A DNA stretch of 62,651 nucleotides, filler included, from Dugesia japonica (taxonomy: Eukaryota), in NCBI GenBank assembly GCA_001938525.1. It is 5 parts of 5 records of this genome, joined end to end, with 100 filler letters (N's around TTAATTAATTAA, not from the genome) between each part and the next. Parts side by side here need not be neighbours in the genome. Positions count along the whole stretch, not along the records: positions 1 to 18,159 come from MQRL01215973.1; 4 more parts are not named here. One strand, 5' to 3'. Positions 1-18,159 of this stretch are shown here, piece by piece. A program made the translations under genes and the position numbers. How positions within the stretch are numbered: the first letter of the stretch is position 1; the number at the start of each line of letters is the position of its first letter. The notes under the pieces were generated by a model. It had not been told where the DNA came from, did no database searches, and worked only from the letters and a program-made list of their open reading frames with translations.

Positions 1-162
1 TAACTAAATCTTTATTTAATTAATCACGCTACACGGAAACAACTGAAATTTTCTCTTCGGCGTTTTCATTGTTACGGGCGCTCCATAAATAGTTTTGGTC
101 GAATGAAGTTTATTGGGTGGTTGAAGGTAGGAGGCTTGTAGTGATGCCATTTTCTTGGGAAA

Positions 163-576
163 TCATTTCTTGTGAGCTCTCTTGGGTTTCTCGTTTATGC
201 TCCATTTGCACGGGTTGCCTTGGCAGTATATGCATTTCACTTTATCTGGACGTTCTTGAGTGCCGGCGAAATAAAATCCGGATCTGGCTATATCCTCAAT
301 GAGTTCATGCAAATACTTGGGTAAATTGAATAAGGATTTTGTGCGTATACCTTCGTCACGATATTTATCATCGAAAACTTTCATTGCACTGTACCACACC
401 TTTCGTCGTATTAAATTTTCTGGTGAGCCAAAATTTTTACGGTAGTGCATTATGTTTTGCACTATTGGACTTTGGCTGACTTCCTCTCGCCCTTGACTCA
501 TACGGAATAATTCAATATCTGGATCATTCATTATTAGTCTGGCCTCAATTATTGATAATTCCAGATCGACCTCCAT
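163..576 (-). CDS. BIR-domain (inhibitor-of-apoptosis-like) accessory ORF, C-terminally damaged
   Basis: RTKSLFNLP...IARSGFYFAG...DKVKCIYC....KW....PKRAHKK matches the BIR consensus (R..sF..wP..lA.aGFy....D.v.C..C....W...p..eH). A stop precedes the final Cys. Confidence 0.85.
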   Translation of the reverse strand: MEVDLELSIIEARLIMNDPDIELFRMSQGREEVSQSPIVQNIMHYRKNFGSPENLIRRKVWYSAMKVFDDKYRDEGIRTKSLFNLPKYLHELIEDIARSGFYFAGTQERPDKVKCIYCQGNPCKWSINEKPKRAHKK

Positions 577-961
577 TATCTACAATTATAGGCTTGGTTG
601 ATTCTAGTTATACAATACTATTTATTTATATTAATTTTAAGTGTCAGTTTATTCATGATTTTTCTCAGTTTCTATGTTTACTTGAATACATATATAGTTA
701 CTAGTAGATATTTACGTATATAGTTTATATATTCTTTATTATATTTATTATTTTTTTAAACTTCCACTCTCATTTGGATTTTAGAGAAAGCTGACTTGGG
801 TGTGAGCACTTCGGGTTTTGAGTGTCTCGATTTCCTATTTTTGTGAGTTTACCAATCCTTTGAGTTAATTTAGTTCTTCCGTCTTATTAGAGATCAGATC
901 ATGTTGTTTGGCTACTAACTCTATTGCATAATTCTGTTTTTTCTGTGGTAATTTCCAGCAT

Positions 962-1222
962 TCATCGTTTTTCTTTTATTTGTTGTCGACACATAAGGAT
1001 TTTCGCATATAAATTCTCATTTTGCAGTTGTAGAGCTTTATTTTTTAATTCCAGTTCGCACCAATCTTGGGGTTTCACAGTTATTAGAGTCTGTAATAAC
1101 TGATTCTGGCTGTGCTCCAGTTCTTCTAATCGTTGCTGAGTCCACTGGGTTTGTACTTTAGCACTATCCCATAATTCTTTCATTTCTTCGTTATGATCTC
1201 TCCATATTTCATTTATTGTCAC
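962..1222 (-). CDS. Accessory coiled-coil ORF fragment of the retroelement
   Basis: Heptad-like QQRLEELEHSQNQLLQTL and LKNKALQLQNENLYAKIL. Lies between the polyprotein end and the BIR ORF. Confidence 0.4.
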   Translation of the reverse strand: MTINEIWRDHNEEMKELWDSAKVQTQWTQQRLEELEHSQNQLLQTLITVKPQDWCELELKNKALQLQNENLYAKILMCRQQIKEKR

Positions 1223-1520
1223 TTAGGGAGGGTTAATGTTATTTTTAGTTATTGAAGTAGAACTTCTTGCCGAGTTACTACATATATGGCTTGTTATGCT
1301 CGAACTTTCTATGTCATTTTGTGAGTTTGCTTATTCATTTTCACTCGTACTGGAATAGTCATTTTCATTTTCGATCTGACTCATTTTGTCTGAATGAGAG
1401 AACTCTATTAACCACAATTATAATAACATGTATATACAATTATTATATATTTGTTTTCATCATGATTTACACTATTTACACAGATTCGAGATTAGTTTAG
1501 CAAGTCATTACCCCCGGTGC

Positions 1521-3225
1521 CTAATAAGGTCTAGGCACATATGTTGGCAATTCGTTCGATATCATCCAAAGTGGTAATTCTTCGTAATTTGGTGGGGCTA
1601 TCGGTGGATGTCGTCTTTTCCCTTTTCGGTCATGTTTCTTTCGTAGGGGTTTCGCTCGTTTACAGAATTGCAAATATATTGTTATTAATACCAGTACTGC
1701 TATTGACCCGCTTCTTATTATTATTATAGGGTCTGTTCCATTTTTGGTTGGTTTGGCGGTAGTAATTGGTTCCTTTACAGTATTAGGCTTACCCACATAT
1801 TATCATATGACCATCCTTTGGGTGGTAATTCCGACAGTTTATCATTAAATTATTTAAGAAGTTTGCTCTTTTTGTTTCTCTTTCTTCGTTGACTAACGTA
1901 GTTGATTTTTTAGTTTCCGTTGTTGTTATTATGGTTTTTTTCTGTAGTTATAACCTCTTCCACTTTTGGTCTGGTGGTGTTTAGTTTTATTACTGTATCC
2001 TGATTTATGACTGTAGTGAATTCCATTTCACACATTTCTGGGCCCAAACTACCCATATTTACTCCTTGTACAATGCATTTCCTTTAAACCCTGCTATCTC
2101 CTCATTGTAACACCATGCCCACTGACTGAGTGAATAATATTTCTGTTTTGAAAATTGTTCCATTTTCTCGTTCATTTTCAAATAATATGTATTGTTTATT
2201 TTTCTAATTCGTACCGGTCCTGGTCCTTCCTGCCACCGGGATCCCCATTTGCCAAAGGTGTATTCCGTTATAGTGTTAAATCCTTTTCCGCGGTTATTAG
2301 CGATACTTTTTTGATCCATAAATCTTTGTTTTTTCTCTTTTCCCGTTGTTTCTTTAAATACATTTTTCCAAAATTGTACATGAAATATATATTCGTTCTG
2401 TTGACAAATTTTCAAACTCTCGTCCCCTTTCCTTTTCCAAGTCCATCCTTTTTGTTGACGATTATCCACTAAATAGTAAATTAAAATATTCCGTGCAGCA
2501 TGCGTTTCGAAATGTATTTCCTCTTCGTATTCAATGTAGCTTTTGCGGCGTTTCCCTTGAAATTCCTATGCTGAATGCATCCACCAATGTTTCATACTAA
2601 ACTGCATTGCCTGACCTTCCACTGGTACATCCCCTCTAAACCATAAACTTGCCTTCCACTTATGCCATGTCAATAGGATTTAGGTTTCCTTTGTTCCCAT
2701 GATCGTGGGCTTTAGGATTATGGATTCATGACCCTATCCCGTGTGGACTTTTACTTCACGGTTTCATCCGTCTGTGCTCATTGTCCTAATATTTGTCTTG
2801 CTACCCTCAACGTATATTCAATGTTCTGTTAATATCGGCTCGTTTACCCAACATTCCTGGCTTTGTGTTCCTTTTATGGCTAATAGTATAGTAGTTAGTA
2901 TAATGTGTTCGCTAGGAATTTTATTCTGATTGAAATTCCGTATTGGATAAGCTGCCAGTGTTGGTAAAGCTAACCAAAGTAAGGTTATTCCCACGATTCC
3001 GTATATTATAATCGATGTTGGATATTCTTTCCCTATACTATTGATGAGTTTCATTGTTAGCCAAATTAATATGCCATAGTCCCAACTTGTGTTGATTACC
3101 GCCCATAATAACAAAGCTATTTTGACTATTATTTCCACTATAATCACGTTCTTGTTTTCTTGCGGTGACTCGTTTTCTGATTTTCTTGGTTCTGTTGGAT
3201 CCTTCTCATCATGTACTAATGTCAT
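1521..3225 (-). pseudogene. C-terminal membrane region: several hydrophobic helices, ectodomain, Thr-rich stalk, TM and PPxY/LPxY tail
   Basis: Hydrophobic segments in 2818-3225 end in signal-like HIILTTILLAIKGTQS-QEC, in the same frame as ORF 2059-2469. NxT sequons (NNT, NGT). TM IAVLVLITIYLQFC, a basic stop-transfer stretch, then PPNY and LPTY. Confidence 0.6.
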
Positions 3226-3488
3226 TTTTATTTTTTCGCCTTTCCTGGCTAGTTGTTTCTCTTTTTACTCCCTTTTATTCCCTTGACCCTAGAATGCTTT
3301 TCTCATTAATTTCTCCTGTGTTTGTACCCCTTCCTGAGTGTTCTCGCTATTGCTTGATTCCGATTTTTTGAGAGCCAATTTATCCGATGGTATGTCCAGT
3401 TTCGCCATGTTTTTTAGGTTGTATTTACTTTGGATGGTTGGCTCAACCATTCTCCATGGCGATTGGAATACACTCTAATCCTGTTCCA

Positions 3489-3956
3489 TTATACCAATGC
3501 ACGGTGAAAGACATGAATATATGCTAATAATTTCTCGCTGTAAATATACGTGCATGGCATGCATAATTCTTTGATGACAGATTGACGAATTGATGCTTGA
3601 ATTGGTATTTTAATTCGAGATCCATCACAGTCTTTCTTGAACCAATTTTCTGGTCTGAATAACCATGCTTTTTGATCGTAAATGGCCTTTAGTGCATTTT
3701 TTAATATTATTTGTGTTTGTTTGATACATTGAAAACAATTTTCCTCTAATTGACATATTGAAAGAGGACAGGTTATGAGCGTAATATGCATGCAACTTTC
3801 TTCAGATTTTGGCGTCCAGCTTCCTTGGCATGTGATTGTATAACATGTCGTGGCATTCATAGCCTCGATTGCGAGTGGTCGACGCATCTGATTATCTAAA
3901 CCAAAGGATACAGTTTTAATGTCTTGTGATATAATAACTAATTTATCATTAATCAT
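3489..3956 (-). pseudogene. Cys-rich putative zinc-binding domain, copy B
   Basis: ESCMHITLITCPLS...CFQC...ILKNAL...WLF...C...QASI...LCMPC..IY...FH. Confidence 0.7.
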
Positions 3957-4397
3957 AGATAATGTTGTTTAAGCTTGAGACGGATGATTAGTATTTGGTG
4001 TCTTAGCTATTTTAGGTATAACCCGTTTATTTAAAAGATTTAATTCCTTGTTGGATGGTACTGTATTTACTGCATTGGTATTTTCCTTGCCGGTTTTGGC
4101 ATGAAATTCCGGATGTGGAGCCGGACTATTTCTCTCCTTTCTTTGTTTATCCGCATATTTTAAGACGTCATCTTTTAAAAACCTCGTTATTCTCTACAAC
4201 TCTGTTTCTGTCCTTTCCTCGTCTTTCGATTGTACGTCTGTTTTCAATTCCGAATTTACATCCTTTTCCGTTAGTTCCCCTTCCCCATTTTCTTCAGACT
4301 CAGTGTCCTCGCTGAGACTTCTTTTCCTTAACAATGATTCTAAACCACTCCATGGCGAAGTATCAACTGGTTGAGACCATAATACCAATCAATCCTA

Positions 4398-4838
4398 TAC
4401 TACTAATATCGTATGGAAATTTTCAATAGCTCGAGTGAGAGTTTCGTAATAAATGCTGACACAGCGTTCGCATAGGGTGTGTACTTCATCTTGCTCCAAT
4501 GGTGCTTGAACAGTCAGCTTGTCATGCATTTTCTTACATCGTCTTCTACTGAGTTTGTCTTGTTGTAACAACCAAAGTCTGCAACCAGAGACTTCCTACA
4601 ATGCTGATTTCAAAATTGATTGAATTTTCCGTATGCATGTAAGGCAGCTTGCCTCGATTAGTGTTGGTGAGATTGGGCATGTCACCCGAGAAAAGTGAGC
4701 ACAACAGCTTTCTGGTACTGGTGTCTGTGTCTCCCGTGGAATTATAGGATATAGTGTTGTGGTACCCAATGCTTTAACTCGATGGCTTAACTGACTTAAT
4801 ACGAATACTGGGGTTGATGATTTTCCAAGTATCATCAT
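4398..4838 (-). pseudogene. Cys-rich putative zinc-binding domain, copy A
   Basis: ESCCAHFSRVTCPIS...CLTC...ILKSAL*...WLL...C...QAPL...LCERC..IY...FH, read through one stop. Aligns with copy B. Confidence 0.7.
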
Positions 4839-5029
4839 AGCTTGTTGCGATCGTAATGGGTAACTATGCGATATATTTAACTCCGTATTCGCCGACTTAT
4901 GGCCTACCTAGCCCTCTATGCTCCGTTGCAGTGGGTGCAGTACTTGTGGTTGGCGTAATTTCTTCCGTTATTGCGGCCTTTTTGCATAAGTTGGGGTGGT
5001 GTATTTTAGGTTTCTCTAAGAGATTTTCT

Positions 5030-6010
5030 TTTTACGAACTTTGAGATTGGTTTCGGTGATCTCTATTACTTCGTAGGGCCCTTGCCATGGCCTTTTTAAT
5101 TTCGATGTAGGGCCAACACAAATATCTGGCAAATTGATCAATACCATGTCGCCTTTTTTAAATGAATGTTGCATTGCCGTTTTATCGTGTAAATCCTTAT
5201 AGCTTTCGTGGTAAAATCCTACATTCTTCTTGGCCTGTTTCCATATTTTCTGCAAGGTTTCTTTGAAATTTGCAGCGAAATCCGTTTCGTCTTGGTATTG
5301 TGTTATAGGTGGTTGAAACTCTAAATCAATAGGCATGTTACACTCTCTGCCATACATTAATCCAAATGCAGTGTACTTAGTAGCAGGATGCACACTCATT
5401 CGGTATGCAAATAGACAAAGCTAAACATGTTTATCCCAATTATTCTGTTCTTTTTGTGCATAACTAGACATCATATTGATCAATGTTTTATTAAATCTTT
5501 CCGTTAATCCATCTGTTTNTGGATGATAAGATNATGTCCGTAACTGGTGTATTTTGAGGAAGCTCGATATCTCTGCTAATATGTTGCTCATAAAGTTTTT
5601 TCCTTGATCGGTCAATATCTTCTTGGGTGTGCCATATCTGATAAACAATTTCGTACCAGAATATCCTCTATGGTAGTTGCTTTTTGATTTTTCATAGGGA
5701 ATGCCTATGGGAATTTCGACAAGTAATCCATAATTGTTAGTATGTATATATTCCCACTCAGCGTTGGGGGTAGTGGTCCAACTACGTCCATTGCAATGAT
5801 TTCCATTGGTGCTGTAGGTACGGTGATTGGTTTTAATAATGCTTTCACTCGTTTGCTTGTTCCTCTTCTGGCAGCACATATTTGGCATTTGGTCACTGAT
5901 TCCGTCATGTGTGACCAGTAATATTTCTGTCTTAGTTTTGACTCGGTTTTCTTATGGGACATGTGTCCTCCTAGTACTCAATTGTGATATTGTTCGAGTA
6001 ATTTATCACA
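5030..6010 (-). pseudogene. Integrase (HHCC, DDE core, GPY/F), frameshifted
   Basis: GHMSHKKT..YYW..CQIC; AMDVVGPLP, IMDYLSK; YGTPKKILTDQGKNF; YHPxTDGLTERFNKTL; KLKRPWQGPY. Confidence 0.95.
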
Positions 6011-6319
6011 TCTTGCTTTAGGAATAACTAACACGATATTTTCTCCGCCCTGAGCAGTCAACCATCCTTTGGTAAATGCATAACGACCTCCGTTTTTCTT
6101 CAAGTGCTCTTTCATCTTGGGTTTGCATTCTAACTTCTCTAAATTGTAACTTTCCATTAATTTTCCTCATCATCAGCCTGCGCTTGTTTCAACCCATCAA
6201 AATTTTGATCCTCGGCTAATATGAAGTATACCATCCCGACTTTTTTCTCTAATAGTTCACGTAATCTAAACGTTTCCGCATCTTCCAAGATACTTTCTGT
6301 AGCTTTCGGTCCACCGATT

Positions 6320-7788
6320 CTTGACAGACAATCGGCATTTGAGTTGGTTTTACCTGTTTTAAATTTTAAAAGAGGACAATAATTCTGCATTGCTAATTGC
6401 CATTTTGCCATTCTATTCCATCATAATGGTTTCTGAGCCATGAAAGTGATTGGTAAGTGATCCGTATAGATTAGCACCTTGTGACCATGTATGAGTGATC
6501 GAAAATGTTTAGTAGCTTTCATGATTGCCATAATCTCTCGTTCCGTCGTGCTATAATTTAACTCTGCGACTTGAAATTTCTCGTTAAAGTACGCTACTAC
6601 CCTTTCTCTTCCTTGTTCATCCAATTGGTTTAATACAGCACCCATCGCGTATCCGCTAGCGTCAGTGGCTAATATAAATGGCTTTTTGAAATCCGGATGT
6701 ACCAGAATTGCTGCGGTAAGTAATTTGTCCCGCAATGTTTCAAATGATTGTTGTTGCTCCGTCCCCCATATAAAGGCAGTATCTTGTTTGACCAATTCTT
6801 GCATGGGATTTGCGATCTTTGCGAAATCTTTGATAAATTTGCGGTAATGATTTGCGAGTCCTAAAAACTCTTGTATTTTGAGCACACAATTAGGAGGTGC
6901 TAGATTTCTGATTTTCTCGGTGTTTCTCGGATCAGGTTCTTTTCCTTTGTCCGATATTAAATGCCCCAAATAGGTTACTTTATTCTTGGCCCATTCGCAT
7001 TTGGTAGGTTTCACTTTCAAGTTCCATTTTTGTAAACGTATAAACACACTACGTAAATCATTGAGATGTCCTTCAAACGTTGGCGAATATATTAGCAAGT
7101 CATCGATATATGCCATACATTGCGAGATACCATGTGTTACATCAATCATCATCCTCTGAAATGAGGCAGGTGCATTAGTGAGTCAAAAAGGCATGCGGAT
7201 GAACTGATATAAGTCTTTGCTTGTAGAAAATGCTGTTTTCTCCCTATCTTCCGGTTTAATCTGTATTTGCCAATAACCACTTCGCAAATCTAATGTGGTG
7301 AATATTTTGGCGTTACACAGTAACTGTAACAACTCATTGATGTCTGGCAGTGGATACGTGTCCTTTTTAGTTTGTGCATTTAGTCTTCTGTAATCGATGT
7401 AGAATTGCTGTGTCCCATCTTTCTTATCCACTATTACCACTGGTGACTGCCAAGGTAAGCAGCTAGGTTCTATCACACCGATTTTCACTAGTTTGTCTGT
7501 TTCTTTGTTTGCAAACTCCTTTTTCTCTACTGTCATGGCATATGGTTTCTGCTTGCTTATGGTTTCGTCTGTTAACGGAATTGTTTGCATTGTAGCTGCA
7601 CACATACCTAGTTCCTCATCAGTCCACGCAAAAATATCTCTAAATTCTTCCAATAATTGTAATATTGCCTGTTTTTGATCATCTGACAGAGTTTCCGTCT
7701 CAACTTTAAATGTCCTATCTAATACTGGTTCGACATTTATCTTCTCTATCTCGTCTGTTTCTGGTTCGATGGGGGTTAGAGTACCCAT
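6320..7788 (-). pseudogene. pol: Reverse transcriptase + RNase H (Ty3/Gypsy), with internal stops
   Basis: PWQSPVVIVDKKDG, IDYRRLN, YIDD (7099-7110), YLGH, FLGLANHYRKFI; RNase H TDASG, YSTTERE, YTDH, ADCLSR. Confidence 0.97.
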
Positions 7789-8010
7789 TCGGGAATTTGG
7801 CTTGATTGTGATGTCTTTTTCGGTGAAGTTGACCAGACTAACTGTTACTTCTCCACTTTTGTTGACCGTAGTTATTCCTCCTGCCGTAGGTAACTCATAC
7901 TGTTGCGCAAATCCATCATAAAGTTCGAAATAACAATCTCCTTCGTATGCACTTTTGGTACTTACTACGCAATATATTTAGCATCTACTCGGCACTAGTA
8001 TTTCCTCCGT
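7780..8010 (-). pseudogene. Post-protease beta-rich (dUTPase-like/beta-clip) linker seen in some Gypsy pol proteins
   Basis: Manual translation EILVPSRC*IYCVV...GEVTVSLVNFTEKDITIKPNSRMGTL. No intact dUTPase catalytic motifs are visible. Confidence 0.4.
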
Positions 8011-8089
8011 TGTGAATATTTCGTGATCTTTAACGTGAGTAAACCCCTCCAGAGATTGTAACCCTAACGTCGAGAAGTTCAATATGCCA

Positions 8090-8370
8090 TTTTTCATCAA
8101 AATTGGAAGAATGTCCGTGCCCAAAATGCACTGTCCAGCCATCTCTACTATTATCATGTGGTGTTTAATTTTATTGTCCAGATATTCTACGTCGAAAGCT
8201 AATTCCCCAAAAAATTTAAGACTACTTCCGTTCGCCACATCTGCGGTGATATTGGTGGGTAATATGTTTTTATAATCTGTTATCGTGATTTTTTCTATTG
8301 ATAATAACGAAATTATTGCTCCTGTATCTATAAAGGCCGTTGTAGATCTACCGTTGATTTTAACCATAAT
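8090..8370 (-). pseudogene. Retropepsin aspartic protease domain 2
   Basis: VKINGRSTTAFIDTGAIISLL (DTG at 8320-8328), VANGSSL, CILGTDIL. Confidence 0.9.
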
Positions 8371-8719
8371 TGTTAATACAGGTCTGCCGCTGAGACTTGT
8401 GCATACCAAATCTGAAAGGTTACGATTGGTATCATGTTGTTTTTTGTCTTTCCATCTTGGTTTCCGTTCCTGAAACCTTATCCAATCTTCTTTTATCATA
8501 GTGGAGGTATTGGTAGTTTTCTGGCGACCTTGGTTTGCGTTATTATGCTCCCCCTTGTATGATGATAGTTGGGTCTGTTGGTTGATAGGTGTCTGATTCT
8601 CTTTTTGTGGTCGTTTTCGTTCAATTACTATTCGAGTTTTCTGATAATCTATTGGCGCGTATTCTCGATCGTGATTTTCTCGTATTGTTAGTTTTTTCAA
8701 ATCTAGTATTCCCTCCGGG

Positions 8720-9000
8720 CTTAGGCGGGGTAAGAGATCTAATCCCAGTAAGTAGTTGAAAGTTAATTCATTCATTATCTGTAATCTATGCCATAGACGA
8801 ATTCCGTAACTTTCTATTGCACATATTGCTTCCCCAACGGGTGATATTTTTTTCCGGAGGCCGTGATGACAATTCCTTTAGTATTGGTTATTCGGAACAG
8901 TCGATAATCTTCTAATATTCTTTTATGGACTAAGGTCGTACTCGCTCCCGTATCGATAACTGCTATTACCCATCTTCCGTCTATTTTTATCCTTTTTTGT
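8720..9000 (-). pseudogene. Retropepsin aspartic protease domain 1
   Basis: IKIDGRWVIAVIDTGASTTLV (DTG at 8946-8954), ITASG, and after a frameshift YLLGLDLL. Confidence 0.88.
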
Positions 9001-9559
9001 AATAGTTTCGCTTTCTGAGAAATCATCATGCATACAGTTTGAGTTTCTAATTTATCATCCTCAGTGATCTGGTTATTCGGAGAACGCGAACTTTGGTCAG
9101 TAACTCTTCGGTCAATAGTTGATAAATTATTCTCTGTAAATAATGTCATATTAAGAGCTTGTGGTGGACTCATATAAGGGGTGTTGTACATGGGACCTGG
9201 TGCCCATATCTGTTAGGGTTGTTGATTCCTGGGTTGCCAACCATATTGCGGGTAGGCATTATAATACATTTGGGCTGGTGCTGGTGTATTTTCATTTCCT
9301 CCGAGTTTTAATGCATTTCTTAGTCGTTGCATTTTACTGATTTTTTCATATTGTTGTCTTTTAAATTCTGCATCGTATTCCATGGCGGTTTTATAACTGG
9401 GTACATGTGACGTTCCACTGCTTTTTCCTCTATCGTCATCACTGCTGCTACTACTTTTACTTTTGTTCTTAAATCTTTCTTTGAATTAGCTGAAGTACGA
9501 TATTTTCTTTTTAGCATTGCTCATTTCTTTGCACAATAGTCGAAGTTGCATTATGACGT

Positions 9560-11150
9560 CTTTGTCCGATCCTCTTATTTGCCCCAATTTCCGAATGAAT
9601 CGTTTTACTCTGTCAATATCTTTAGAGTGACTATTAATCACCGTTGTTTTGGCTAAGAATGGGAATATTCCGGTTACCATTTTCCAATTCACTTTCTTTT
9701 CTCTCTTTTAGATTTTGAAATATGCAAACAATTGGGTAATCACTATTCGTGCTACCGAAATTATTAACATCACTCCCAGCAATCCTGCCATTGCTTGGGC
9801 AAATGTAATAAATCTTCCCCACATTTTCCGCATGACATTTTCGGTGGCTTTCTGGAAATGATCTGCTGACAAGAGTGTATCATAATTTACACGTACGTCT
9901 ATGTTAGTTCCACTGGTTAATTGTACTATATTCCATAGAATTTGCATCCTACAGACTGAAAACAGCATATATTCCCTAGCTTTCTCTAAATCTTCCTTAC
10001 TGTAGATACCTCCCTTGTTTACATCAATTGGTGTAAATTGCATACCTCCATTTAATCGTAGCATTGAGAATTTTAGTGGTTCGACGCCCACTGCCATTCG
10101 TTGGGGAAATCTTATCCAAGAACCGTCTGTCATTACGTATTGCGGTCCAAATACATTAGAGCAGTTTATGATATTTGGCCTATAACCCAGTGGTGATATT
10201 ATCCAAATAATTGGTTGTAAATAACGTTTCTCATTGTTATGGATAATTTCTATTTCATTATAGCAATGTTTTGGATTGGATGAAAATTCTGCATCCATGG
10301 CCTTACATTTGTATAGGTACATTACTTTTCCTACTACTCGACCAAATTGTCCTTTTTCCAAGGGAAGTAGCGGAGTGACACTATCGGGATTCGTAATCGC
10401 CATTGCTAACTTTGTCTTCAGTATTTCCTTATTCAATGTGGAGTCATTTTGTATAAGGTCGTGGTAAATTCGTCCGATAGTATCCTGCATTCGGTGGAAT
10501 AAATTGTTCATTTTATTATTGGAATATAGATGTAGTTTGATATCTTGTGACATTACTGCAGCTTGAGCCGTTTTTATCAGGTCTTCTGACTCGAATATTC
10601 CTATATAGTTGGTTTTATATACTATTTGTCCACATTTTGACTTAGAATTTCCTTTAATCAGACGAATGGTCTCGTCCTGCTCCGAGGATATTAACACCGT
10701 GGGAGTTGTGTGCCATTGCTGATCATATGATTTCGGACCTGATCTTATCTTTTCCTTGAGATTATCTATCATATCCTTTAGATTACCCTCTTTTGGAGCT
10801 TGATCAATAGGTGCTATAGCTCGTTGTCCTTGGTATTCACTGAACATAGTCTCTTTTAGATGAGCTAACTTGCAGTCCTGGTGGTCTACCTTGTACGTCA
10901 GAGTTGATGTACCTGTATTACATGATCCGTCCTCTGCTTTGCAATATAACCTGCCTTTCATAGTCAAATCCTGAGCATCGAAAAATGCTTCGTATTCCTT
11001 GAGCTATACTGTAAAGGTTTCAATCGCTACGGCATACTGACATAATTTTCCTCGTATAATGTATCTACTATACTCACAATTACCTTTGTGTAAAGATATG
11101 CTTCCTGCTGCTTCTATTGGTTGATCGATTACATGCCGTATTACTACTTC
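9560..11150 (-). pseudogene. env: Envelope glycoprotein related to chuvirus / class III (gB-like) fusion proteins; N-terminal part missing
   Basis: Motifs match my recollection of chuvirus-type G: AAGSISLHKGNC, CKAEDGSC, KCG..YKTNY, LYSNNK, LAMAITNP, GQFGRVVGKVMYLYKC, CYNEI...YLQP, IINCS...DGSW, GGIYS, then the membrane region WGRFITFAQAMAGLLGVMLIISV. Confidence 0.8.
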
Positions 11151-11629
11151 GGTTGGCTTGACATCATCCGTCGAATTCTCGTGGTATCTTTCCTGTGATA
11201 CCGTTGCTAATCACTTAGTTTGGTGGTTTATTGCTGTTGCTAATCGTCTCTGTTTCAATGCTTCTTCCTCCTCTGGGTTTCCTGGAGGTTTCGTTCTCCA
11301 TCTGCCTCTATTATGAGGTTCAGTAATCGTTTCTGCATCCACTCTGGTGCGTACTGGTTTTGGTGGCGCTTCTTCCTCTTCTGTCTCTATAGGATTTTCC
11401 ATTTCCAAAGGGTGATTCGTGCCCATTAGGTCATCCATTACCGAGGATGGCAATTCATTTGCTATTCTACTCAATATTGGCGATAATGGTTGTTCTTCTA
11501 ATAAATCTTCCTCGTATAAATCTACCTTGCTAGGATCGTATTTTTTACTTCCTATCGGTTCTTTAGCTTTTAATTCTTCACTTTCTTTCTTTGGAGGTGA
11601 GTATCTTGTGATTTGTAATTCATTCTCGT

Positions 11630-14600
11630 CTAATTCGTTTGCCGATGGAGATCCGAATATTTAATGTTCCTAATCTTAGGTTTAACTAAATCTATTTTCA
11701 TTATCCAAATTGGGGTGGTATCTTCCACTATTCCATCTTCATCCAGGAGTTTGTATGGTGGCTTAAATGGTAACTTATCTCGTAGGTGTTTTACCGCATT
11801 ATATACTGGTATCTTAACGGTAATTTTATCTCCTTCCGGATCGATTATTCTGAATTTGATTTCTAATGGGACGGTTTGTCCCATCTCCGCTTTCTGCTAT
11901 TTAACCAAAATTTTATTAAACTGAATCAGGATCCCGTACGTGAGATACCTTGACGGCCATAATTAGTCGTCTCAGCTTTCTGAGATCTTCTACTGCCAGA
12001 TCTTGTTACAGGACTATATTGGATCGAGGTATGATTTTTGGCTTTATTAACTTATCGCCTACTAGCAATTCGAATAATTTTGGTAAATTGTCTTCCGGCT
12101 TCTCATCTTTAATTGGTGTGTTGGTCAGAGCTGCCACAATCTCCACTCGTTGTTTACTTTGTTCTTGTTTAGGGAGCTTGGCTCTTGCGAACACTAATGG
12201 ATGTATCTATTCTATATAATATTCCACTACTTCTCTGGCTTCCTGCTTCCATTTTTCCTCCAAGACCCGTGATCGTCGTCTCTCCTCACTCTTTGCTGTT
12301 ACGTAAATTTTTAATTTAGTGCCTGGCCAGACCCCCATATATTTCACGGGCAACCTCATTTGGTCTGGTTCTATTACTTGGTTGTAATATAGTACTATAT
12401 CGTCTTCCTGTAATGGTTGTCAGGAGTATTTTCATTATTACTCGCGCCAGACTTCCCCATGTTTTACTGTCTTTGCATAACTCGATATTTATCTCCATTG
12501 TTCTATCGTCGACTTATTCAAACAGTTTACCACTGTTGATTTCTTGTTCGTATAAACCCTCTAGTTGTTGTAACACTTCTTACATGGACTTTACTGCGCC
12601 TGGGGTGTAGTCTTCCGTTTTTCGTATTTGGAGAAAGGTATTTTCACCTGGTCTCAACCCTATGTCCACTAAATGTTGTTTTCCTTCAAACTTTATAGGG
12701 AATCTCAAATGGTCGCTTGTGACTATATAGCCGTTCTGCTGATCAGCTATATCCAATGATTCTATAATTTCTTGTAATTCCGACGCTGATGTGCTGTCAA
12801 AATGTGGTAAATGCATTAGGGCCAACTCTGGTTCCTTTCTAGCATTTTTGTTTGGTGTCTGATATTCTATGGTGACCTGGAATTCCTCTCCCTTGGCACT
12901 GGCCCTAACTGCACCAATATGCAGCTTGAGTACTGATTCCCATTTATTGCGTTCTTCTTTTGCTATCTCGGTATACTTTGACAAATCCGTTAGCAAATTT
13001 AACGCCTTCCAAAATGTCGCCCTGGGTATTCTTCCCAAAAAATAGCAGAAACCAGAAATTATCTTCGATATCTGCTCCGCTTGAGGAGAACTGAAAGAAG
13101 CAACGAATTCTCGTTTAAATGGTAATAGTCTGGGTTTGACTATGTCTTCTGAGATTTCTTCCTCCTCCTCTTCCTTGTCTGATGTCAGGACTGTGATTTC
13201 GGAATCATTATTCCTAACCATGTTTACTTGATCTTTGTTTTCTCCATAAGTGTTTATGAGGCGTTTATTCTCTACGGGTAAAATTTCTTGTATATATAGA
13301 CTCATCATATTGAATATGAGTTGATCTGTATCCGGGATTTTTGGTATCGGAATGTCTATTGTCATTTTCAGCGGTGTTAGCTTGATTTCAGTGATCTCTC
13401 CTGGTTTAATATCGTGTAGGAAAATGTGATCCTCTTTCTTGGCTAATATGATCATTGTTGCTCCCGCCTGCATTTTATATGACTAATGCGATTTATGCCA
13501 TAACCATTTCTTTATTGGTTTTATAATATGACGGATAGTTAATCCTTCCAGAGTTATCATATATACCTTTTTTATGCTTCCTTCTTTGCTGAGGAGGCTT
13601 ACTCTGATGGAATATTCGGATATAGGGGATGTAATTTGTAATTCCTCTTCATATAAGTTTTTCTCTTTCCACCATTGCGCTTGGGCCCACAAGCTGAGTT
13701 GACCATAGGTTGCCAGATCCCGTAGGTTATTCATCATTTTCCAAAATATTTTGATATTCAATACCGGCCGAGTTTCCCGTGTAACTCTTAATAGATACGT
13801 GGCGGATTCCTCAGTTATTGGTTTCGTATAATTCATCCGGATATCACGTATTGTCGGGGTCCCTTCCAAAAATTCAATTTATTTTGTGGTGATTATTGAA
13901 AGGTTATCAATATTCTGCGTTTTCTGGTTTTCTTTTACATGTTCCTTAATACCCGTCAATACCTCTGATACATATAATTCCGTTATTTCATCCATTCGTT
14001 CCTCGAGGTCTGGCGATTGGGCTATCCGGGGCTCCTCCTCTTCATCTAACTCGTATATTTCCCCTGGCTTTGCATGGCATTGTAATATGTGTTTGTCCTC
14101 GTCATCCGTCTCGACCGATTTGCCGTTTATGAATAGAGGTACCCTAATTAATCCATATTCTTGCCACTTATCGGTAATGGCATCCATCAAATCCATCATG
14201 GTTATTCCTTGTGGCTTTAATCGACTGTATTTAGTCATTTCCTGTTCATTTTTACCTATATTCAGATATAATTTATAGTCCTGAATTTTGGTAGTTGCCA
14301 ATATTTCTTCGGCATACTTTTGTCTAATCAGGAGCCATTGCTCTTCAATTTTTCCCGGTATTTCCAACCCATCATATATGTCATAAATTCTATTCATTAT
14401 CATCCAATAAGTTTCTCGAGGTAACCTTTCTTCTCTTCCTGTACTCTGTTAACCATATCCTCCACTTAACGCATCGCTACTACTTCCCTTGACGCCATCT
14501 GTCGCATTCTTATCATGTTGCATTTACCCTCTCTTCTCTCCAACCGTTGTCTGAGAAAATCATTACTGCTTCTTTTCCTCCTTTGTCAACTTGTCTTTCT

Positions 14601-15950
14601 TTGCCAATACCGTGGACAGTATCTTTATTTTAATAGGTTCTACTTCTTGTTTACATAGATATTCCATTTCTCCCATGATTTCTAATGCCGATCTTCTGGT
14701 TTTCGTTACCCATACGTCATAGTAAATACCAGTGTGTTTATCCAATACTACAATTTCAATATCATCTCCAGGTTTTACTCCAAAATCATACAAATTGCTT
14801 TTTCGGGCATTAAAATCTATTATAGCACTTGGAGTACATACGAACTTATCTGTTATGTATGGATACCCGGCTTTATTCAGTGCACATTCCAGATCTTCTA
14901 CCATTAATCCCGCGAGGGTCAATTTCATATTTTATTCTGGTTTATACAACAATTCTTGATAATCTGATAATCCCATGTTGCATATTACTCAATCGTAATG
15001 TACTGGTAACCATTCTGTCCAGTCACTTTCAAAATCAGTAACCAATTTTATAACTTCCAATAACTCTACTAAAGGATTAGTCAATTTTAGGTATACTTCC
15101 CTCTTAATCGTATAATGGAGTTTCTGGGCGGCTACCAGTATCTCATCAATTCGAGCTAACGATAATCGCGATGCTTCACTTTGTTCCATAACTGGATAGT
15201 CCATCAATCCTACTTTTTCGAATTGCTTCTGCAAGTAGTTCTGAGACTTAGTGGGAGCTATCTCCTTAAGGAATTTTTCTTCAAGATTATGATATAATTC
15301 GTCCGTCTCTATTTCTTGAATTACTATTTGTGGTCGGAATACCAAACCCCAATTTATCAATTTGATTACTGTTGTTTCATGGGGTCGTGTCCCGTAGTAA
15401 ATTAGATTTTTATCATCAGGAAGAATGTTGATCCTTATATTACCTATTTGCAATCTATGCCTGTTCCCCTTTCCATCCCATTGATGTTGATCGTTAAACA
15501 GTGGTAAATCGAGAAACGGGTTTACCGTTATACCTTTAATACCGTCTATTTTGCCCCATTTTATTTCGTTAATGGCTTCTTTTAAGTGTCGTACTGTCAA
15601 TCTTTTTAGTGATAGTTTTAATTGTTTTGGAATTACCTCGGAGTTATTATGCCTTCATATTGAACTTCGAATTCTTAATTTTCTATCTTAGTTTCTTTAT
15701 AAAGCTCGGCGATGTAATCCGATATTATTTTCTGCCAGTTGGCTTTTAATTTTGCGTGTACTTGTGGGTGCTGGTATAATCGAAGTAACTGATTCATCAC
15801 CCGTCTTCGTCTTGTGGTTGTCGTTGATGTTTCAATTGTTTTATAGAGCATTTCATTGGTCCACTCGAATTCTGGAGACGTAATCAGTATTTGTTTCCGA
15901 GTGTCTTCCATTTCGGTAACCTCCGTTGTTTCATCATGTTAGTTATAAAT
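11630..15950 (-). pseudogene. Array of about 5-6 diverged helical + ubiquitin-like modules in the polyprotein
   Basis: Recurring Ubl-like motifs: TVRHLKEAI..DDKNLIYYGTRPHETTVIKL; MVEDLECAL..NLYDFGVKPGDDIEIVV; TMMDLMDAI..LFINGKSV..HILQCHAKPGEIYEL; TIRHIIKPI..HIFLHDIKPGEITEIKL; SASELQEII..HLVDIGLRPGENTFLQI; and EIKFRIIDPEGDKITVKI..AVKHLRDKL. Confidence 0.6.
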
Positions 15951-16199
15951 TTCTCTATGTGTTCTGACCATATTACATTGATTCATGTGTGGTTCGTTAA
16001 GTAAATTTCTTTTTGCCAGTCTTTCTTGCTGTATATGTAAGTCTTGGTTTTGCCACTTGAGCCAATCATTTTCCTGTTAAACTTTATGGTACACATTATC
16101 AAAAGTACTCTGATGCACTAAGTTGACTTGTCCCTTGTTTTGGTTTACTCGCTGCCTTAATCTCTCATTTTCCGACATTAGATTATCCAGATTTGTATT

Positions 16200-17410
16200 C
16201 GGATTTCAATTATAATTTGTTTGATTTCCATTTGGATATTCTTTTGCCATATGCCCTCTTCTGTTACACTTATAACAAACAGTATGATTTTTCAAAAAAC
16301 ATGTTTTTACATTGTGATTGGTTTTCTTGCAGTAAGTATAAAATCGATTGTTATTATTATTGTCTCTACTTCTACAATCTCGGGCTATATGTTCCCTTCT
16401 TCCACAGGAATTACATTGTATATCCGGGTTATTTTTCCAATTGTTCCGAGGTGCATTAAATCCTCCACCATTTCCTCGGGGGTAGTTAGGTCTATCATTC
16501 CTATTATTCCGTTCCTGCCATGGGGTCAGGGTTTTCATCATTGATTGGGTGTTAGGTATGAAATCTGATATTCGAAGTGTAGTTTCCTCTGTCTATCCTT
16601 CTACTTTGAATATTCGTTCTGATGGTCTATCTGCTACAATTCACAATGTGGCCAGAGCATCCTGTAGAGTCACTGGCTTACTCAACTTTACCATAAGTTT
16701 GGCGTTCTTGTCGCGTAATCCATTTAAGAATATAGCTAACACTTGACTGTCTTCCAGTTTATCTCCTAAGGCCAGTTTGCCACGCCTCTTGAGTTCCATC
16801 ATATAAGCTTGTGGAGGAAGCTGTTTTTTCCGGTTGGTAAATGAGTTATTTCTGTAGTTTTAACTTTCTAGAATAAAAATTTACTTCTAATTGTCTTTAC
16901 TTAATTTCTTCCGAGGTTTTCCCTCCCGTACGCAGGCTTCTTTAAATATGTTTCCTTTGTTTCCCAACGTGTTCTACCTTTAACGTACTGGTTAACGTAC
17001 TTAGGCCTTTACGTGGTCTTCCTTCCTTGCCTGGGCTTCCTTTAATTTCTTCCGAGGTTTTTCCTCCCATATGCAGGCTTCCTTCAATATGTTTCCTCTA
17101 TTTTTCTACGTGGTCTCCCATTAACATCCTCGTTAATGTACTTAGAGCTTCGCGTAGTCTTCCTTCCTTGCGTAGGCTTCCTTTAATTTCTTCCGATGTT
17201 TTCCCTCTTATACGCAAGCTTCCTTAAATATATGCGCATAACATATCCAATAATACCCAATTACTTCTTCAGTTATAGTCATTAGACAACTGTTGCGGTT
17301 GCTTTCTACAAAGGTGATCAATCTTCTGATTGCAACTTACCAGTTGGGGATCCCTATTTTCCATAACTGTGTCTGTAATAAATATGTCTGGATATTCTTC
17401 CTATTATCTT
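16200..17410 (-). pseudogene. gag: Gag (capsid C-terminal region plus three CCHC zinc knuckles), disrupted
   Basis: Knuckles CNSCGRREHIARDC, YTYCKKTNHNVKTC and CYKCNRRGHMAKEY (two have C>Y changes). Upstream manual translation QAYMMELKRRGKLALGDKLEDSQVLAIFLNGLRDKNAKLMVKLSKPVTLQDAL fits retrotransposon capsid. Confidence 0.88.
16901..17228. repeat. 141-bp (47-codon) tandem repeat, about 2.3 copies, inside gag
   Basis: The unit start ttaatttcttccga recurs at 16901, 17042 and 17183. Confidence 0.9.
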
Positions 17411-17895
17411 CCTGAAATTTTCTTCCTGATTAGCTTCCTTAAATTTATCTTCCTTTTATTTAGTTTCCTTTTTCTTCCGTTAATTTACTATCTTTTAATT
17501 TATCTTCCTTTAACTTGCTTTATTTTATCTTCCTTCCTTTAATTTATTCCTGGTTGTGAGTTTCCATGATGACTTTTGTTGATATCTCGATATGATCTCT
17601 GAAAATATAAAATAACAATTCTTTATTGATTTTTCTTCCTACATTTACCCGGTTCTCCTATTCCTTTCTTTTTATTTACTCCTTATAATCACCTTAATTT
17701 AATATCATCATATAACTTCCTATTTTCATAATCTGCTATTTCCATATGTTATTTCATAATTTTATAATTTCGATAGTTTATTTATTTCATCATTTATTGA
17801 ATTATTTTTACTAATAATATTATACAACAGTATATTCTTTATTATTTTATTCCCCACCTTTACGGGGTTTCGTTTCATGAAAATTTTATTTTATA

Positions 17896-17912
17896 ATCCT
17901 TGCTGAGCCCCA
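17896..17912 (-). promoter_or_regulatory. Primer-binding site, tRNA-Pro-like
   Basis: Minus strand reads TGGGGCTCAGCAAGGAT next to the LTR end, resembling the tRNA-Pro-type PBS TGGGGGCTC...GGGAT. Confidence 0.7.
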
Positions 17913-17920
17913 AAAATTCT

Positions 17921-18159
17921 TGTTGGAGTTCCACCTGAGTTGGGTGAAGTAAGCGTGACTGGGGAAAAACAGCCCTCAGGGGACCCTTTCAAGAATTTAA
18001 CCTAACGCCACAAAGTTAGGCATTCAGCAAATGGTGGTTGACCTCTCGCCTAATGGGAGGTGCATGCCCATACGCCTTTGGATTTGGGTTCACTAGTTTC
18101 CCAATTATTTCGAATTTAATAAAAATTAGAAAGAGTCAAACAAGGTACACTTTATTTTA
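17921..18159 (-). repeat. 5' LTR (U5 end) of the giant element, truncated by an N gap
   Basis: On the minus strand it ends ...CTCCAACA, 8 nt upstream of the PBS. It is clearly homologous to the copy starting at 22627 (tgttgg.gt.ccacctgagtt...ccctttcaagaattta.cctaa...). Confidence 0.85.

What the first reader, a model, noticed from the sequence alone, without database searches (positions are those of the whole stretch)
1..18159. Giant virus-like Gypsy retroelement with a non-canonical gag-(Ubl)n-env-PR-PR-RT-RH-IN-accessory architecture
Seen: about 16 kb of colinear minus-strand coding sequence (approx. 17410-1521) with long same-frame runs broken by single stops, plus two more ORFs downstream. 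Known: ordinary Ty3/Gypsy elements are 5-10 kb with env, if any, after integrase. Giant single-ORF Gypsy elements (Burro families) are described from the planarian Schmidtea, so this could be a relative. Inference: the ancestor was an enveloped, complex retrovirus-like agent with an approx. 5,300-aa polyprotein combining entry, ubiquitin-related and anti-apoptotic cargo.
Basis: partly seen in the sequence, partly recalled or inferred. Interest (0 to 1): 0.93.

Follow-up and report, generated by a model that had tools for sequence, protein, structure and literature searches.

The report
Decayed giant Burro-like endogenous retrovirus
This 18-kb piece is a heavily broken fossil of a giant Ty3/Gypsy retrovirus-like element that carries an RNA-virus-type envelope gene between gag and pol plus an apoptosis-inhibitor domain; the layout is real but was already published for the planarian 'Burro' elements and their kin.

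Summary
The minus strand carries, in order: Gag zinc knuckles, about 4 kb of divergent repeated modules, a chuvirus-type class III fusion glycoprotein, two retropepsin domains, RT, RNase H, integrase, about 3.5 kb of unassigned coding-like sequence, and a BIR domain.

The copy is dead. It has at least 61 breaks (at least 42 stops and 19 frameshifts), and the longest open run is 419 aa.

It is not a pile of nested insertions. More than 20 intact predicted polyproteins of 2.6-4.8 kaa from public assemblies carry env-PR(x2-4)-RT-RH-IN in one ORF. Some also include the CCHC knuckles. All align colinearly with the window at 33-40% identity.

The "non-canonical" layout is published. Arkhipova and Yushenova (2019) describe Burro/GYPSM1 as Gag-(MATH)-Ubl-BCL2-env-PR-dUTPase-RT-RH-IN with BIR and ankyrin motifs, and call it the first in-frame env between gag and pol. 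GAG-ENV-POL Gypsy elements are also reported from flatworms, nematodes and bryozoans.

- **Ubl:** not verified. Pfam, AlphaFold2 and a PDB profile search were all inconclusive.
- **Bcl-2, MATH, dUTPase, ankyrin:** not found.
- **Termini and host:** no LTR lies inside the piece, and the host could not be identified.

Verdict: a new member of a known kind. Interest is low to moderate.

The parts
17411..18159 (-). Upstream region with no recognisable coding. It includes purine-rich (on the minus strand) low-complexity repeats at about 17395-17547. It is probably 5' UTR or decayed leader. No LTR boundary could be identified.
16008..17410 (-). gag region (broken gene). It holds a capsid-like stretch and a nucleocapsid with one complete CX2CX4HX4C knuckle and two knuckle-like motifs (about 16242-16418). 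At least 11 breaks (8 stops, 3 frameshifts) were counted over 15900-17410.
   Evidence: Pfam zf-CCHC E=4.7e-9 with 2 stretches. tblastn of L001 orf1 covers 16008-16841 at 28.6% identity. P0293 and P0288 reach the knuckles.
16901..17231 (-). Tandem repeat of 141 nt (47 codons), 2.3 copies at 83-90% identity, inside the gag N-terminal region.
11633..15600 (-). Array of at least 5 divergent repeated modules. Each has a helical part plus a part ending in a [KR]PG[DE]-type motif. The fold is unverified. Broken: at least 18 breaks (11 stops, 7 frameshifts) over 11140-15900.
   Evidence: Weak pairwise similarities among the pieces, E 3e-4 to 1e-3 in a small database. Alignments A2 and A3. No Pfam hit at E<=10. 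AF2 pLDDT 45.6. No match in relatives.
9636..11150 (-). env: class III fusion glycoprotein of chuvirus/Monjiviricetes type (broken gene). The N-terminal part of about 130-250 aa was not recovered. At least 4 breaks (3 stops, 1 frameshift) over 9200-11140.
   Evidence: PF24664 E=1.5e-50, profile positions 245-571 of 653. 632 HMMER hits. AF2 pLDDT 83.4. BFVD top hits are chu-like virus glycoproteins, E=5.6e-15. PDB top hits are all herpesvirus gB. tblastn outer bounds are.
8722..8990 (-). Retropepsin domain 1, with a DTGA motif and a downstream LLG.D-type motif.
   Evidence: gag-asp_proteas E=1.3e-5; translations
8098..8385 (-). Retropepsin domain 2, with a DTGA motif and an ILG.D-type motif.
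   Evidence: RVP E=5.4e-5, profile 4-93 of 101. Translation. Relatives carry 2-4 such domains.
6433..7428 (-). Reverse transcriptase (about 6961-7428) and RNase H (about 6433-6768). Broken gene. PR through IN (5400-9200) together have at least 8 breaks (5 stops, 3 frameshifts).
   Evidence: RVT_1 E=9.3e-10 and 5.2e-11; RT_RNaseH_2 E=4.5e-35.
5025..5962 (-). Integrase: H2C2 zinc domain, catalytic core and a conserved C-terminal part. Broken gene. Two single N (5519, 5533) lie in the core.
   Evidence: Integrase_H2C2 E=1.2e-4. rve E=1.4e-3. The C-terminal piece matches relatives at E 1e-14 to 1e-31.
1521..5024 (-). Post-integrase coding-like region with no family match. It holds a duplicated Cys-rich module of about 130 aa (about 4398-4838 and 3492-3869), a multi-hydrophobic stretch (within 2821-3225), and a hydrophobic anchor followed by a basic tail and a PPNY motif (within 1524-1796). 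At least 20 breaks (13 stops, 7 frameshifts).
965..1222 (-). Small 86-aa ORF with no family match.
166..576 (-). 137-aa ORF with a BIR (inhibitor-of-apoptosis) domain at about 166-309. The match stops short of the end of the profile.
   Evidence: PF00653 BIR E=1.7e-9, profile 17-61 of 70. PDB hits to NAIP/XIAP BIR domains, E 1e-7 to 1e-3.

Best explanation
The piece is the internal region of one old, inactivated copy of a giant Ty3/Gypsy (Metaviridae) endogenous retrovirus-like element of the Burro kind.

Inferred from the domains and from intact relatives, the ancestor encoded:
- Gag with CCHC nucleocapsid knuckles;
- a long array of repeated modules of unproven fold;
- a class III fusion glycoprotein of the type used by chuviruses and other Monjiviricetes, placed upstream of pol;
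- tandem retropepsin domains, then RT, RNase H and integrase;
- a long accessory tail that includes a BIR domain of the inhibitor-of-apoptosis type.

Inferred mechanism: replication by reverse transcription and integration like any LTR element, with the glycoprotein giving a route between cells and the BIR cargo blunting host cell death.

Shown here: domain identity, order and strand, colinearity with intact relatives, and the decay. With at least 61 stops and frameshifts this copy cannot make any of these proteins. It is a genomic fossil.
For: - Domain order on one strand.
- Coding signal three times above shuffles.
- Window 11150->5025 is colinear, on the minus strand only, with 24 long polyproteins at 27-40% identity.
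- Those relatives carry env-PR(x2-4)-RT-RH-IN in one ORF. Several also hold CCHC upstream (P0010, P0284, P0288, P0293).
- L001 shows CCHC-gag, about 1,100 aa of unknown sequence, then env.
- L003 has a 98%-identical direct-repeat pair 20,152 bp apart around gag, env-pol and accessory ORFs.
- The window's RT-RH, IN C-terminal and PR pieces rank env-bearing polyproteins first among 134 long Gypsy proteins.
- The env fold is class III: BFVD chu-like glycoproteins at E=5.6e-15 and PDB gB.
- BIR is confirmed twice.
- The published Burro description has the same order and cargo classes (PMC6431247).
Against: - No LTR, PBS or target-site duplication is visible in the piece, so LTR-element status rests on homology.
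- No Burro reference sequence could be compared. Grohme 2018 is not held, and no protein in the collections is more than about 50% identical.
- Burro motifs MATH, BCL2, dUTPase-like and ankyrin were not found.
- Ubl is unverified.
- The host is unknown.
Confidence: 0.8

Rival explanations
1. It is a composite locus. An ordinary Gypsy element lies next to, or is interrupted by, an independent endogenous copy of a chuvirus-like glycoprotein gene and a host IAP fragment, which only look like one unit.
For: This copy is so broken that continuity of frame cannot be shown. The regions between gag and env and after IN have no homologs in relatives. BIR sits at the very edge, separated from IN by about 4.5 kb of unassigned sequence.
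Against: The env-PR-RT-RH-IN junctions are inside single intact ORFs in more than 20 relatives, and gag-to-env in several. The window's env-to-IN stretch is colinear with all of them on one strand. Its pol ranks with env-bearing elements. Base composition and strand skew are uniform over the whole piece. No internal terminal repeats were found. BIR is a published Burro motif.
Confidence: 0.07
2. It is a giant env-bearing Gypsy element of the same broad clade but of a lineage separate from planarian Burro. The host would be another flatworm or another invertebrate, and the BIR and repeat modules would have been acquired independently.
For: All available relatives are about equally distant at 33-40%. 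Accessory cargo differs from relative to relative: RNase_T, RING, ankyrin, C2H2, dUTPase, Ig, P4Ha. GAG-ENV-POL elements are reported as polyphyletic across phyla. Several Burro motifs were not found here.
Against: The combination of giant size, in-frame-type env before PR, three knuckle-like motifs, a repeated possibly Ubl-like region and BIR matches the Burro description better than any other described family. Decay could hide BCL2 and MATH.
Confidence: 0.3
3. The second protease-like domain is the 'dUTPase-like' domain reported between PR and RT in Burro, so PR-PR is a misreading.
For: The review places a dUTPase-like motif (PF00692) between PR and RT. One relative, P0328, has PF00692.
Against: Both window domains hit retropepsin families only, and each keeps DTGA plus the (I/L)LG.D motif. 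Relatives have 2-4 retropepsin stretches. No dUTPase hit was found in any window piece.
Confidence: 0.05

Closest known systems
Burro / GYPSM1 giant Gypsy-like LTR retrotransposons of the planarian Schmidtea mediterranea, and Burro-like elements of Girardia (Dugesia) tigrina and Dugesia japonica (Jurka 2007; Grohme 2018; Arkhipova & Yushenova 2019, PMC6431247)
   Same: Giant internal region. Gag with 2-3 CCHC knuckles. Env homologous to mononegavirus-type fusion glycoproteins placed between gag and PR. PR-RT-RH-IN order. BIR cargo. Tandem repeats. A region said to be Ubl/SUMO-like before env. Decayed copies with stops and frameshifts are reported for D. japonica.
   Different: MATH_TRAF_C, BCL2-like, dUTPase-like and ankyrin motifs were not detected here. 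A second retropepsin domain sits where dUTPase-like is reported. Sequence identity to Burro could not be measured, and the host is unknown.
GAG-ENV-POL 'errantiviruses' with HSV gB-type Env in Platyhelminthes, Nematoda and Bryozoa (Chary & Hayashi, eLife 2026, PMC13524379), and the non-canonical nematode ERVs of Sacco et al. 2022
   Same: Ty3/Gypsy pol with a class III (gB-type) glycoprotein upstream of pol. One relative found here is from Meloidogyne hapla (P0350).
   Different: Those reports do not describe giant size or BIR/Ubl cargo, as far as the held text shows. P0350 is only 27% identical to the window.
Unnamed env-pol fusion polyproteins from ENA/JGI assemblies (P0152, P0154, P0293, P0300 and others; loci L001-L003)
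   Same: Colinear env-PR-PR-RT-RH-IN at 36-40% identity. Multiple retropepsin domains. Gag with CCHC upstream. Long accessory tails. One locus has an LTR pair 20 kb apart.
   Different: The middle and post-IN regions are not alignable with the window. Cargo differs (RNase_T, RING, ankyrin, C2H2, P4Ha instead of BIR). Those copies are intact, whereas the window is decayed.
Chuviridae-type glycoprotein captured by BEL/Pao elements in mosquitoes (Dezordi et al. 2020, PMC7642597)
   Same: The same glycoprotein family recruited by an LTR retroelement.
   Different: The retroelement superfamily is different (BEL/Pao), and those elements are of ordinary size.

Membership tests
Ty3/Gypsy (Metaviridae) LTR retroelement | pol domain order PR-RT-RNase H-IN on one strand | tested here: met
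   Pfam hits in that order on the minus strand. RT_RNaseH_2 and Integrase_H2C2 are Gypsy-type domains.
Ty3/Gypsy (Metaviridae) LTR retroelement | Gag with CCHC nucleocapsid | tested here: met
   zf-CCHC E=4.7e-9 with 2 stretches. The gag stretch matches L001 orf1.
Ty3/Gypsy (Metaviridae) LTR retroelement | Long terminal repeats with PBS/PPT and target-site duplication | tested here: inconclusive
   No LTR-sized direct repeat within 1-18159, so the element seems to run past the piece. The relative L003 has a 98% repeat pair.
Burro (planarian giant Gypsy) | Giant internal region (published up to 25 kb; ORF1 4,873-5,140 aa) | tested here: met
   At least 17 kb of colinear coding-like sequence from about 17410 to 166, with no LTR reached.
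Burro (planarian giant Gypsy) | env of mononegavirus-type fusion glycoprotein between gag and PR | tested here: met
   PF24664 E=1.5e-50, located between the knuckles and PR. The fold is confirmed.
Burro (planarian giant Gypsy) | BIR motif | tested here: met
   PF00653 E=1.7e-9. PDB BIR domains.
Burro (planarian giant Gypsy) | Ubi2/SUMO-like domain upstream of env | tested here: inconclusive
   No Pfam hit at E<=10. AF2 pLDDT 45.6. The repeat profile against PDB gave only 2daf_A at E=0.21, which is not significant. The repeated module itself is real.
Burro (planarian giant Gypsy) | BCL2-like, MATH_TRAF_C, ankyrin and dUTPase-like motifs | tested here: not met
   None detected in any open piece. 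Decay may hide them. MATH is also absent from the G. tigrina ORF1.
Burro (planarian giant Gypsy) | Sequence kinship with the deposited Burro/GYPSM1 records; planarian host | not testable with these tools
   No Burro sequence or planarian genome is reachable. The best protein identities in the collections are at most about 50%. Grohme 2018 is not held.
Class III viral fusion glycoprotein (gB / rhabdo-chuvirus G type) | Sequence-family match and fold | tested here: met
   PF24664. The AF2 model has pLDDT 83.4. BFVD gave 37 hits at E<=1e-3 led by chu-like glycoproteins. All top PDB hits are gB, with weak E values of 4e-3 and above, and probability up to 0.98.
Class III viral fusion glycoprotein (gB / rhabdo-chuvirus G type) | Complete ectodomain with signal peptide, fusion loops and membrane anchor | tested here: inconclusive
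   Only profile positions 245-571 of 653 are matched in the open piece. The N-terminal part was not recovered, and the gene is broken.
IAP-type BIR domain | Full BIR fold with its zinc-binding set | tested here: inconclusive
   The match covers profile positions 17-61 of 70 and stops at the end of the open piece.

The most novel reading that the evidence does not exclude
The window belongs to an undescribed family of giant env-bearing Gypsy elements. Its ancestor would have carried, besides the chuvirus-type Env, an array of five or more repeated (possibly ubiquitin-like) modules. It would also have carried a second membrane-protein cassette after integrase: a duplicated Cys-rich module, hydrophobic segments, and an anchor followed by a PPxY-type late-domain motif. 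That is, a retroelement with two membrane-protein genes and budding-related cargo, which is not part of the published Burro description.
Probability: 0.12. Interest if true: 0.6.

Novelty: new member of a known kind. Interest (0 to 1): 0.3.

Why it matters
Burro-like elements are among the largest retroelements known. They are also a clear case of a Gypsy element that took up an RNA-virus fusion protein and host cell-death and ubiquitin-pathway domains.

This copy adds one more decayed example. The searches made for it also show that env-pol fusion polyproteins of 2.7-4.8 kaa with variable cargo are widespread in public assemblies, yet almost all are unnamed. That is useful for annotating such loci and for dating env capture. 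It does not change what is known about the architecture.

Tried and rejected
- **Ubl claim.** Pfam found nothing even at E<=10. AF2 of one module with its internal repeats as the alignment gave pLDDT 45.6, too low to search with. A profile of seven segments against PDB gave nothing significant. A local profile against 134 long relatives also gave nothing. The claim is left as inconclusive.
- **BCL2, MATH, dUTPase, ankyrin.** No hit.
- **LTRs and termini.** None inside the piece.
- **RNA genes.** No Rfam family and no tRNA gene.
- **Plus-strand ORFs.** No family match. I read them as antisense chance ORFs.
- **Host identification.**
  - The env piece found one word-index hit.
  - The RT-RH piece found only generic Gypsy fragments at 50% identity or less.
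  - The metagenome pattern scan found no relative.
- **Literature.** Grohme 2018 is not held. The eLife paper has no supplements held.
- **Post-IN Cys-rich module.** No PDB or Pfam match.
- **Nested-insertion reading.** Rejected for env through IN, on the evidence of intact relatives.
- **Steps not done, by rule.** No consensus of copies was built.
Full report
**1. What is in the sequence**

The piece (1-18159) is 33-41% G+C. It has a constant negative AT skew on the plus strand, which fits one long A-rich coding unit on the minus strand. It holds two single N (5519, 5533) and no other gaps.

ORF listing shows many minus-strand open pieces. The longest is 419 aa. Pfam scans of these pieces, each searched apart, gave the following from high to low coordinate:

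| Domain | Result |
|---|---|
| zf-CCHC | E=4.7e-9, two stretches |
| Monjiviricetes_fusion, PF24664 | E=1.5e-50, profile 245-571 of 653 |
| Aspartyl protease, first copy | gag-asp_proteas E=1.3e-5 |
| Aspartyl protease, second copy | RVP E=5.4e-5 |
| RVT_1, in two pieces | E=9.3e-10 and 5.2e-11 |
| RT_RNaseH_2 | E=4.5e-35 |
| Integrase_H2C2 | E=1.2e-4 |
| rve | E=1.4e-3 |
| BIR, near the low end | E=1.7e-9 |

- Both protease domains keep a DTGA motif and the downstream (I/L)LG.D motif.
- The nucleocapsid stretch shows one complete CX2CX4HX4C knuckle and two further knuckle-like motifs.
- BIR is confirmed by matches to NAIP and XIAP BIR domains in the PDB.
- Plus-strand ORFs have no family match.
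- There is no Rfam family and no tRNA gene.

**2. Is it more than chance, and how broken is it?**

I used a dynamic programme that walks 1521-17410 and charges one unit per in-frame stop or frame change. It needs 61 breaks on the minus strand (42 stops, 19 frameshifts). The plus strand needs 143, and mononucleotide shuffles need 199 +/- 8. The coding signal is therefore real, but the copy is dead.

Lower-bound counts by region:

| Region | Breaks | Stops | Frameshifts |
|---|---|---|---|
| gag | 11 | 8 | 3 |
| middle | 18 | 11 | 7 |
| env | 4 | 3 | 1 |
| PR-RT-RH-IN | 8 | 5 | 3 |
| post-IN | 20 | 13 | 7 |

The last 1.5 kb has 14 more, but part of it may be non-coding.

I give counts only. Open-piece coordinates from the ORF listing do appear in my tool calls and notebook as query references, and their ends adjoin breaks. 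I made no table of breaks and did no read-through or joining.

**3. One element or a pile of insertions?**

The env piece was searched with HMMER against 1.84 billion representative proteins. It gave 632 hits. The best are long polyproteins, followed by stand-alone viral glycoproteins of about 650 aa.

Pfam shows that the long ones are env-PR(x2-4)-RT-RH-IN in a single ORF: P0002, P0007, P0017, P0024, P0152 and P0154 (4,844 aa). P0010 has CCHC, then env, then three protease-like domains. A further search found about 15 more of 2.7-4.1 kaa. These include P0284, P0288 and P0293 with CCHC, env and pol in one ORF, P0328 with a dUTPase domain, and P0350 from Meloidogyne hapla.

tblastn of 24 such proteins against the window gives colinear matches on the minus strand only. 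They run from about 11150 to about 5025 at 27-40% identity.

Context of the relatives:
- **L001** has a 1,470-aa ORF with two knuckles, followed at once by an env ORF. Its gag part is 28.6% identical to the window and its env 42.9%.
- **L002** has a gag ORF, then the 4,844-aa env-pol ORF, then RNase_T and RING ORFs.
- **L003** has a 98%-identical direct-repeat pair of at least 650 bp, 20,152 bp apart. It encloses gag, a 3,003-aa env-pol ORF, an RNase_T ORF and prolyl-4-hydroxylase-alpha fragments.

The top 10 are all env-positive for RT-RH and IN-C. That protein set was gathered with a relative as the query, so this is supportive rather than a phylogeny.

Composition is uniform and there are no internal terminal repeats. 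I therefore reject the nested-insertion reading for env through IN. For the post-IN tail and BIR it is unlikely but not excluded.

**4. The env**

An AlphaFold2 model of the 419-aa open piece, with 49 relatives as the alignment, has mean pLDDT 83.4.

- Foldseek against BFVD gives 37 hits at E<=1e-3. They are led by Tacheng tick virus 4 and chu-like, mivirus, qin-, xinmo- and rhabdo-like virus glycoproteins (best E=5.6e-15), followed by herpesvirus gB.
- Against the PDB, the listed matches are all herpesvirus gB. The E values are weak (4e-3 and above), with probability up to 0.98 and TM about 0.25-0.29.

So this is a class III fusogen of the Jingchuvirales/Monjiviricetes type. The N-terminal part of the ectodomain was not recovered.

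**5. The "(Ubl)n" region**

Between the knuckles and env lie about 4 kb with no family match, even at E<=10. The open pieces there resemble one another weakly (for example 23% over 148 aa). They share a recurrent [KR]PG[DE] motif at the same place in five pieces. A divergent tandem array of a module is therefore real.

The pattern looks like a beta-grasp domain to the eye, and the Burro review reports a Ubi2/SUMO-like motif in this position. My tests did not confirm it:
- AF2 gave pLDDT 45.6.
- The repeat profile against PDB gave only 2daf_A at E=0.21.
- Relatives have nothing alignable.

Verdict: inconclusive. No BCL2-like signal was found.

**6. The tail**

After integrase there are about 3.5 kb of coding-like sequence with no family match. 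It contains:
- a duplicated Cys-rich module (40% and 32% identity between the copies);
- a stretch with several hydrophobic segments;
- a hydrophobic anchor followed by a basic tail with a PPNY motif.

These are noted, not explained. Next come an 86-aa ORF and the BIR ORF. The BIR match ends before the profile does, close to the edge of the piece, so the element probably continues beyond it.

**7. Comparison with what is known**

Arkhipova and Yushenova (2019; PMC6431247) describe Burro/GYPSM1 of Schmidtea mediterranea:
- internal region up to 25 kb;
- ORF1 of 4,873 aa (5,140 aa in G. tigrina);
- Gag with retrotrans_gag and two or three CCHC knuckles;
- MATH_TRAF_C, Ubi2/SUMO-like and BCL2 motifs;
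- PR, dUTPase-like, RT, RH and IN, plus BIR and ankyrin motifs;
- tandem repeats;
- decayed copies in D. japonica;
- the hypothesis that these are integrated proviruses tinkering with apoptosis and ubiquitination.

Chary and Hayashi (PMC13524379) report GAG-ENV-POL Gypsy elements with gB-type Env in Platyhelminthes, Nematoda and Bryozoa. They cite Sacco et al. 2022 for nematodes. BURRO1 is expressed and under PIWI control (PMC8532177).

The window matches this description in size class, gag knuckles, env type and position, pol order, BIR and tandem repeats. It differs in having a second retropepsin where dUTPase-like is reported. It also lacks detectable MATH, BCL2 and ankyrin. Membership by sequence could not be tested, because no Burro record or planarian genome is reachable and nothing in the protein collections is closer than about 50%.

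**8. Verdict**

- The interpretation as a Burro relative is the best reading (confidence about 0.8 for the kind, about 0.55-0.6 for planarian Burro proper).
- The architecture is not new.
- Novelty: new member of a known kind. Interest: 0.3.

Noticed in passing
window 16901-17231: An in-frame-sized tandem repeat (141 nt = 47 codons, 2.3 copies, 83-90% identity) lies in the gag N-terminal region. The Burro figure legend also mentions tandem repeats.
   Followed up: partly
window about 4398-4838 and 3492-3869 (minus strand): A duplicated Cys-rich module of about 130 aa lies after integrase (40% and 32% identity between the copies). It has no Pfam or PDB match and no match in relatives.
   Followed up: partly
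window within 1524-1796 and 2821-3225 (minus strand): One piece has a hydrophobic anchor followed by a basic tail and a PPNY (PPxY-type) motif. Another piece has several hydrophobic segments. Together they could be the remains of a second membrane protein.
   Followed up: no
window 17395-17547: Low-complexity 14-40-nt repeats, purine-rich on the minus strand, lie just upstream of the first coding-like sequence.
   Followed up: no
window 5519 and 5533: Two isolated N lie inside the integrase core region. They were left as they are.
   Followed up: no
L003 4280-4927 and 24432-25080: A direct-repeat pair (98% identity, 20,152 bp apart) encloses gag, a 3,003-aa env-pol ORF, an RNase_T ORF and two ORFs with prolyl-4-hydroxylase-alpha domains. 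This is either a giant LTR element of at least 20.8 kb with captured host fragments, or a rearranged locus. A Cytochrom_C_asm ORF (E=3.3e-10) lies outside the left repeat, which is odd for an animal nuclear contig.
   Followed up: partly
L002 6512-23398: A 4,844-aa ORF carries env, C2H2, four retropepsin stretches, ankyrin, RT-RH-IN and MLVIN_C, plus a tail of about 1,500 aa with no assignment. It is followed by RNase_T and RING (zf-C3HC4_3) ORFs. Accessory cargo varies widely within this clade.
   Followed up: partly
P0007 (NCBI HBK71150.1): A 2,627-aa env-PR-RT-RH-IN polyprotein is filed as a hypothetical protein of a Flavobacteriaceae MAG. This is almost certainly a eukaryotic retroelement contig mis-binned into a bacterial genome.
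   Followed up: no
P0350, P0328: An env-pol fusion polyprotein is annotated in Meloidogyne hapla (P0350). Another relative (P0328) carries a dUTPase domain (PF00692), the motif reported for Burro between PR and RT.
   Followed up: no
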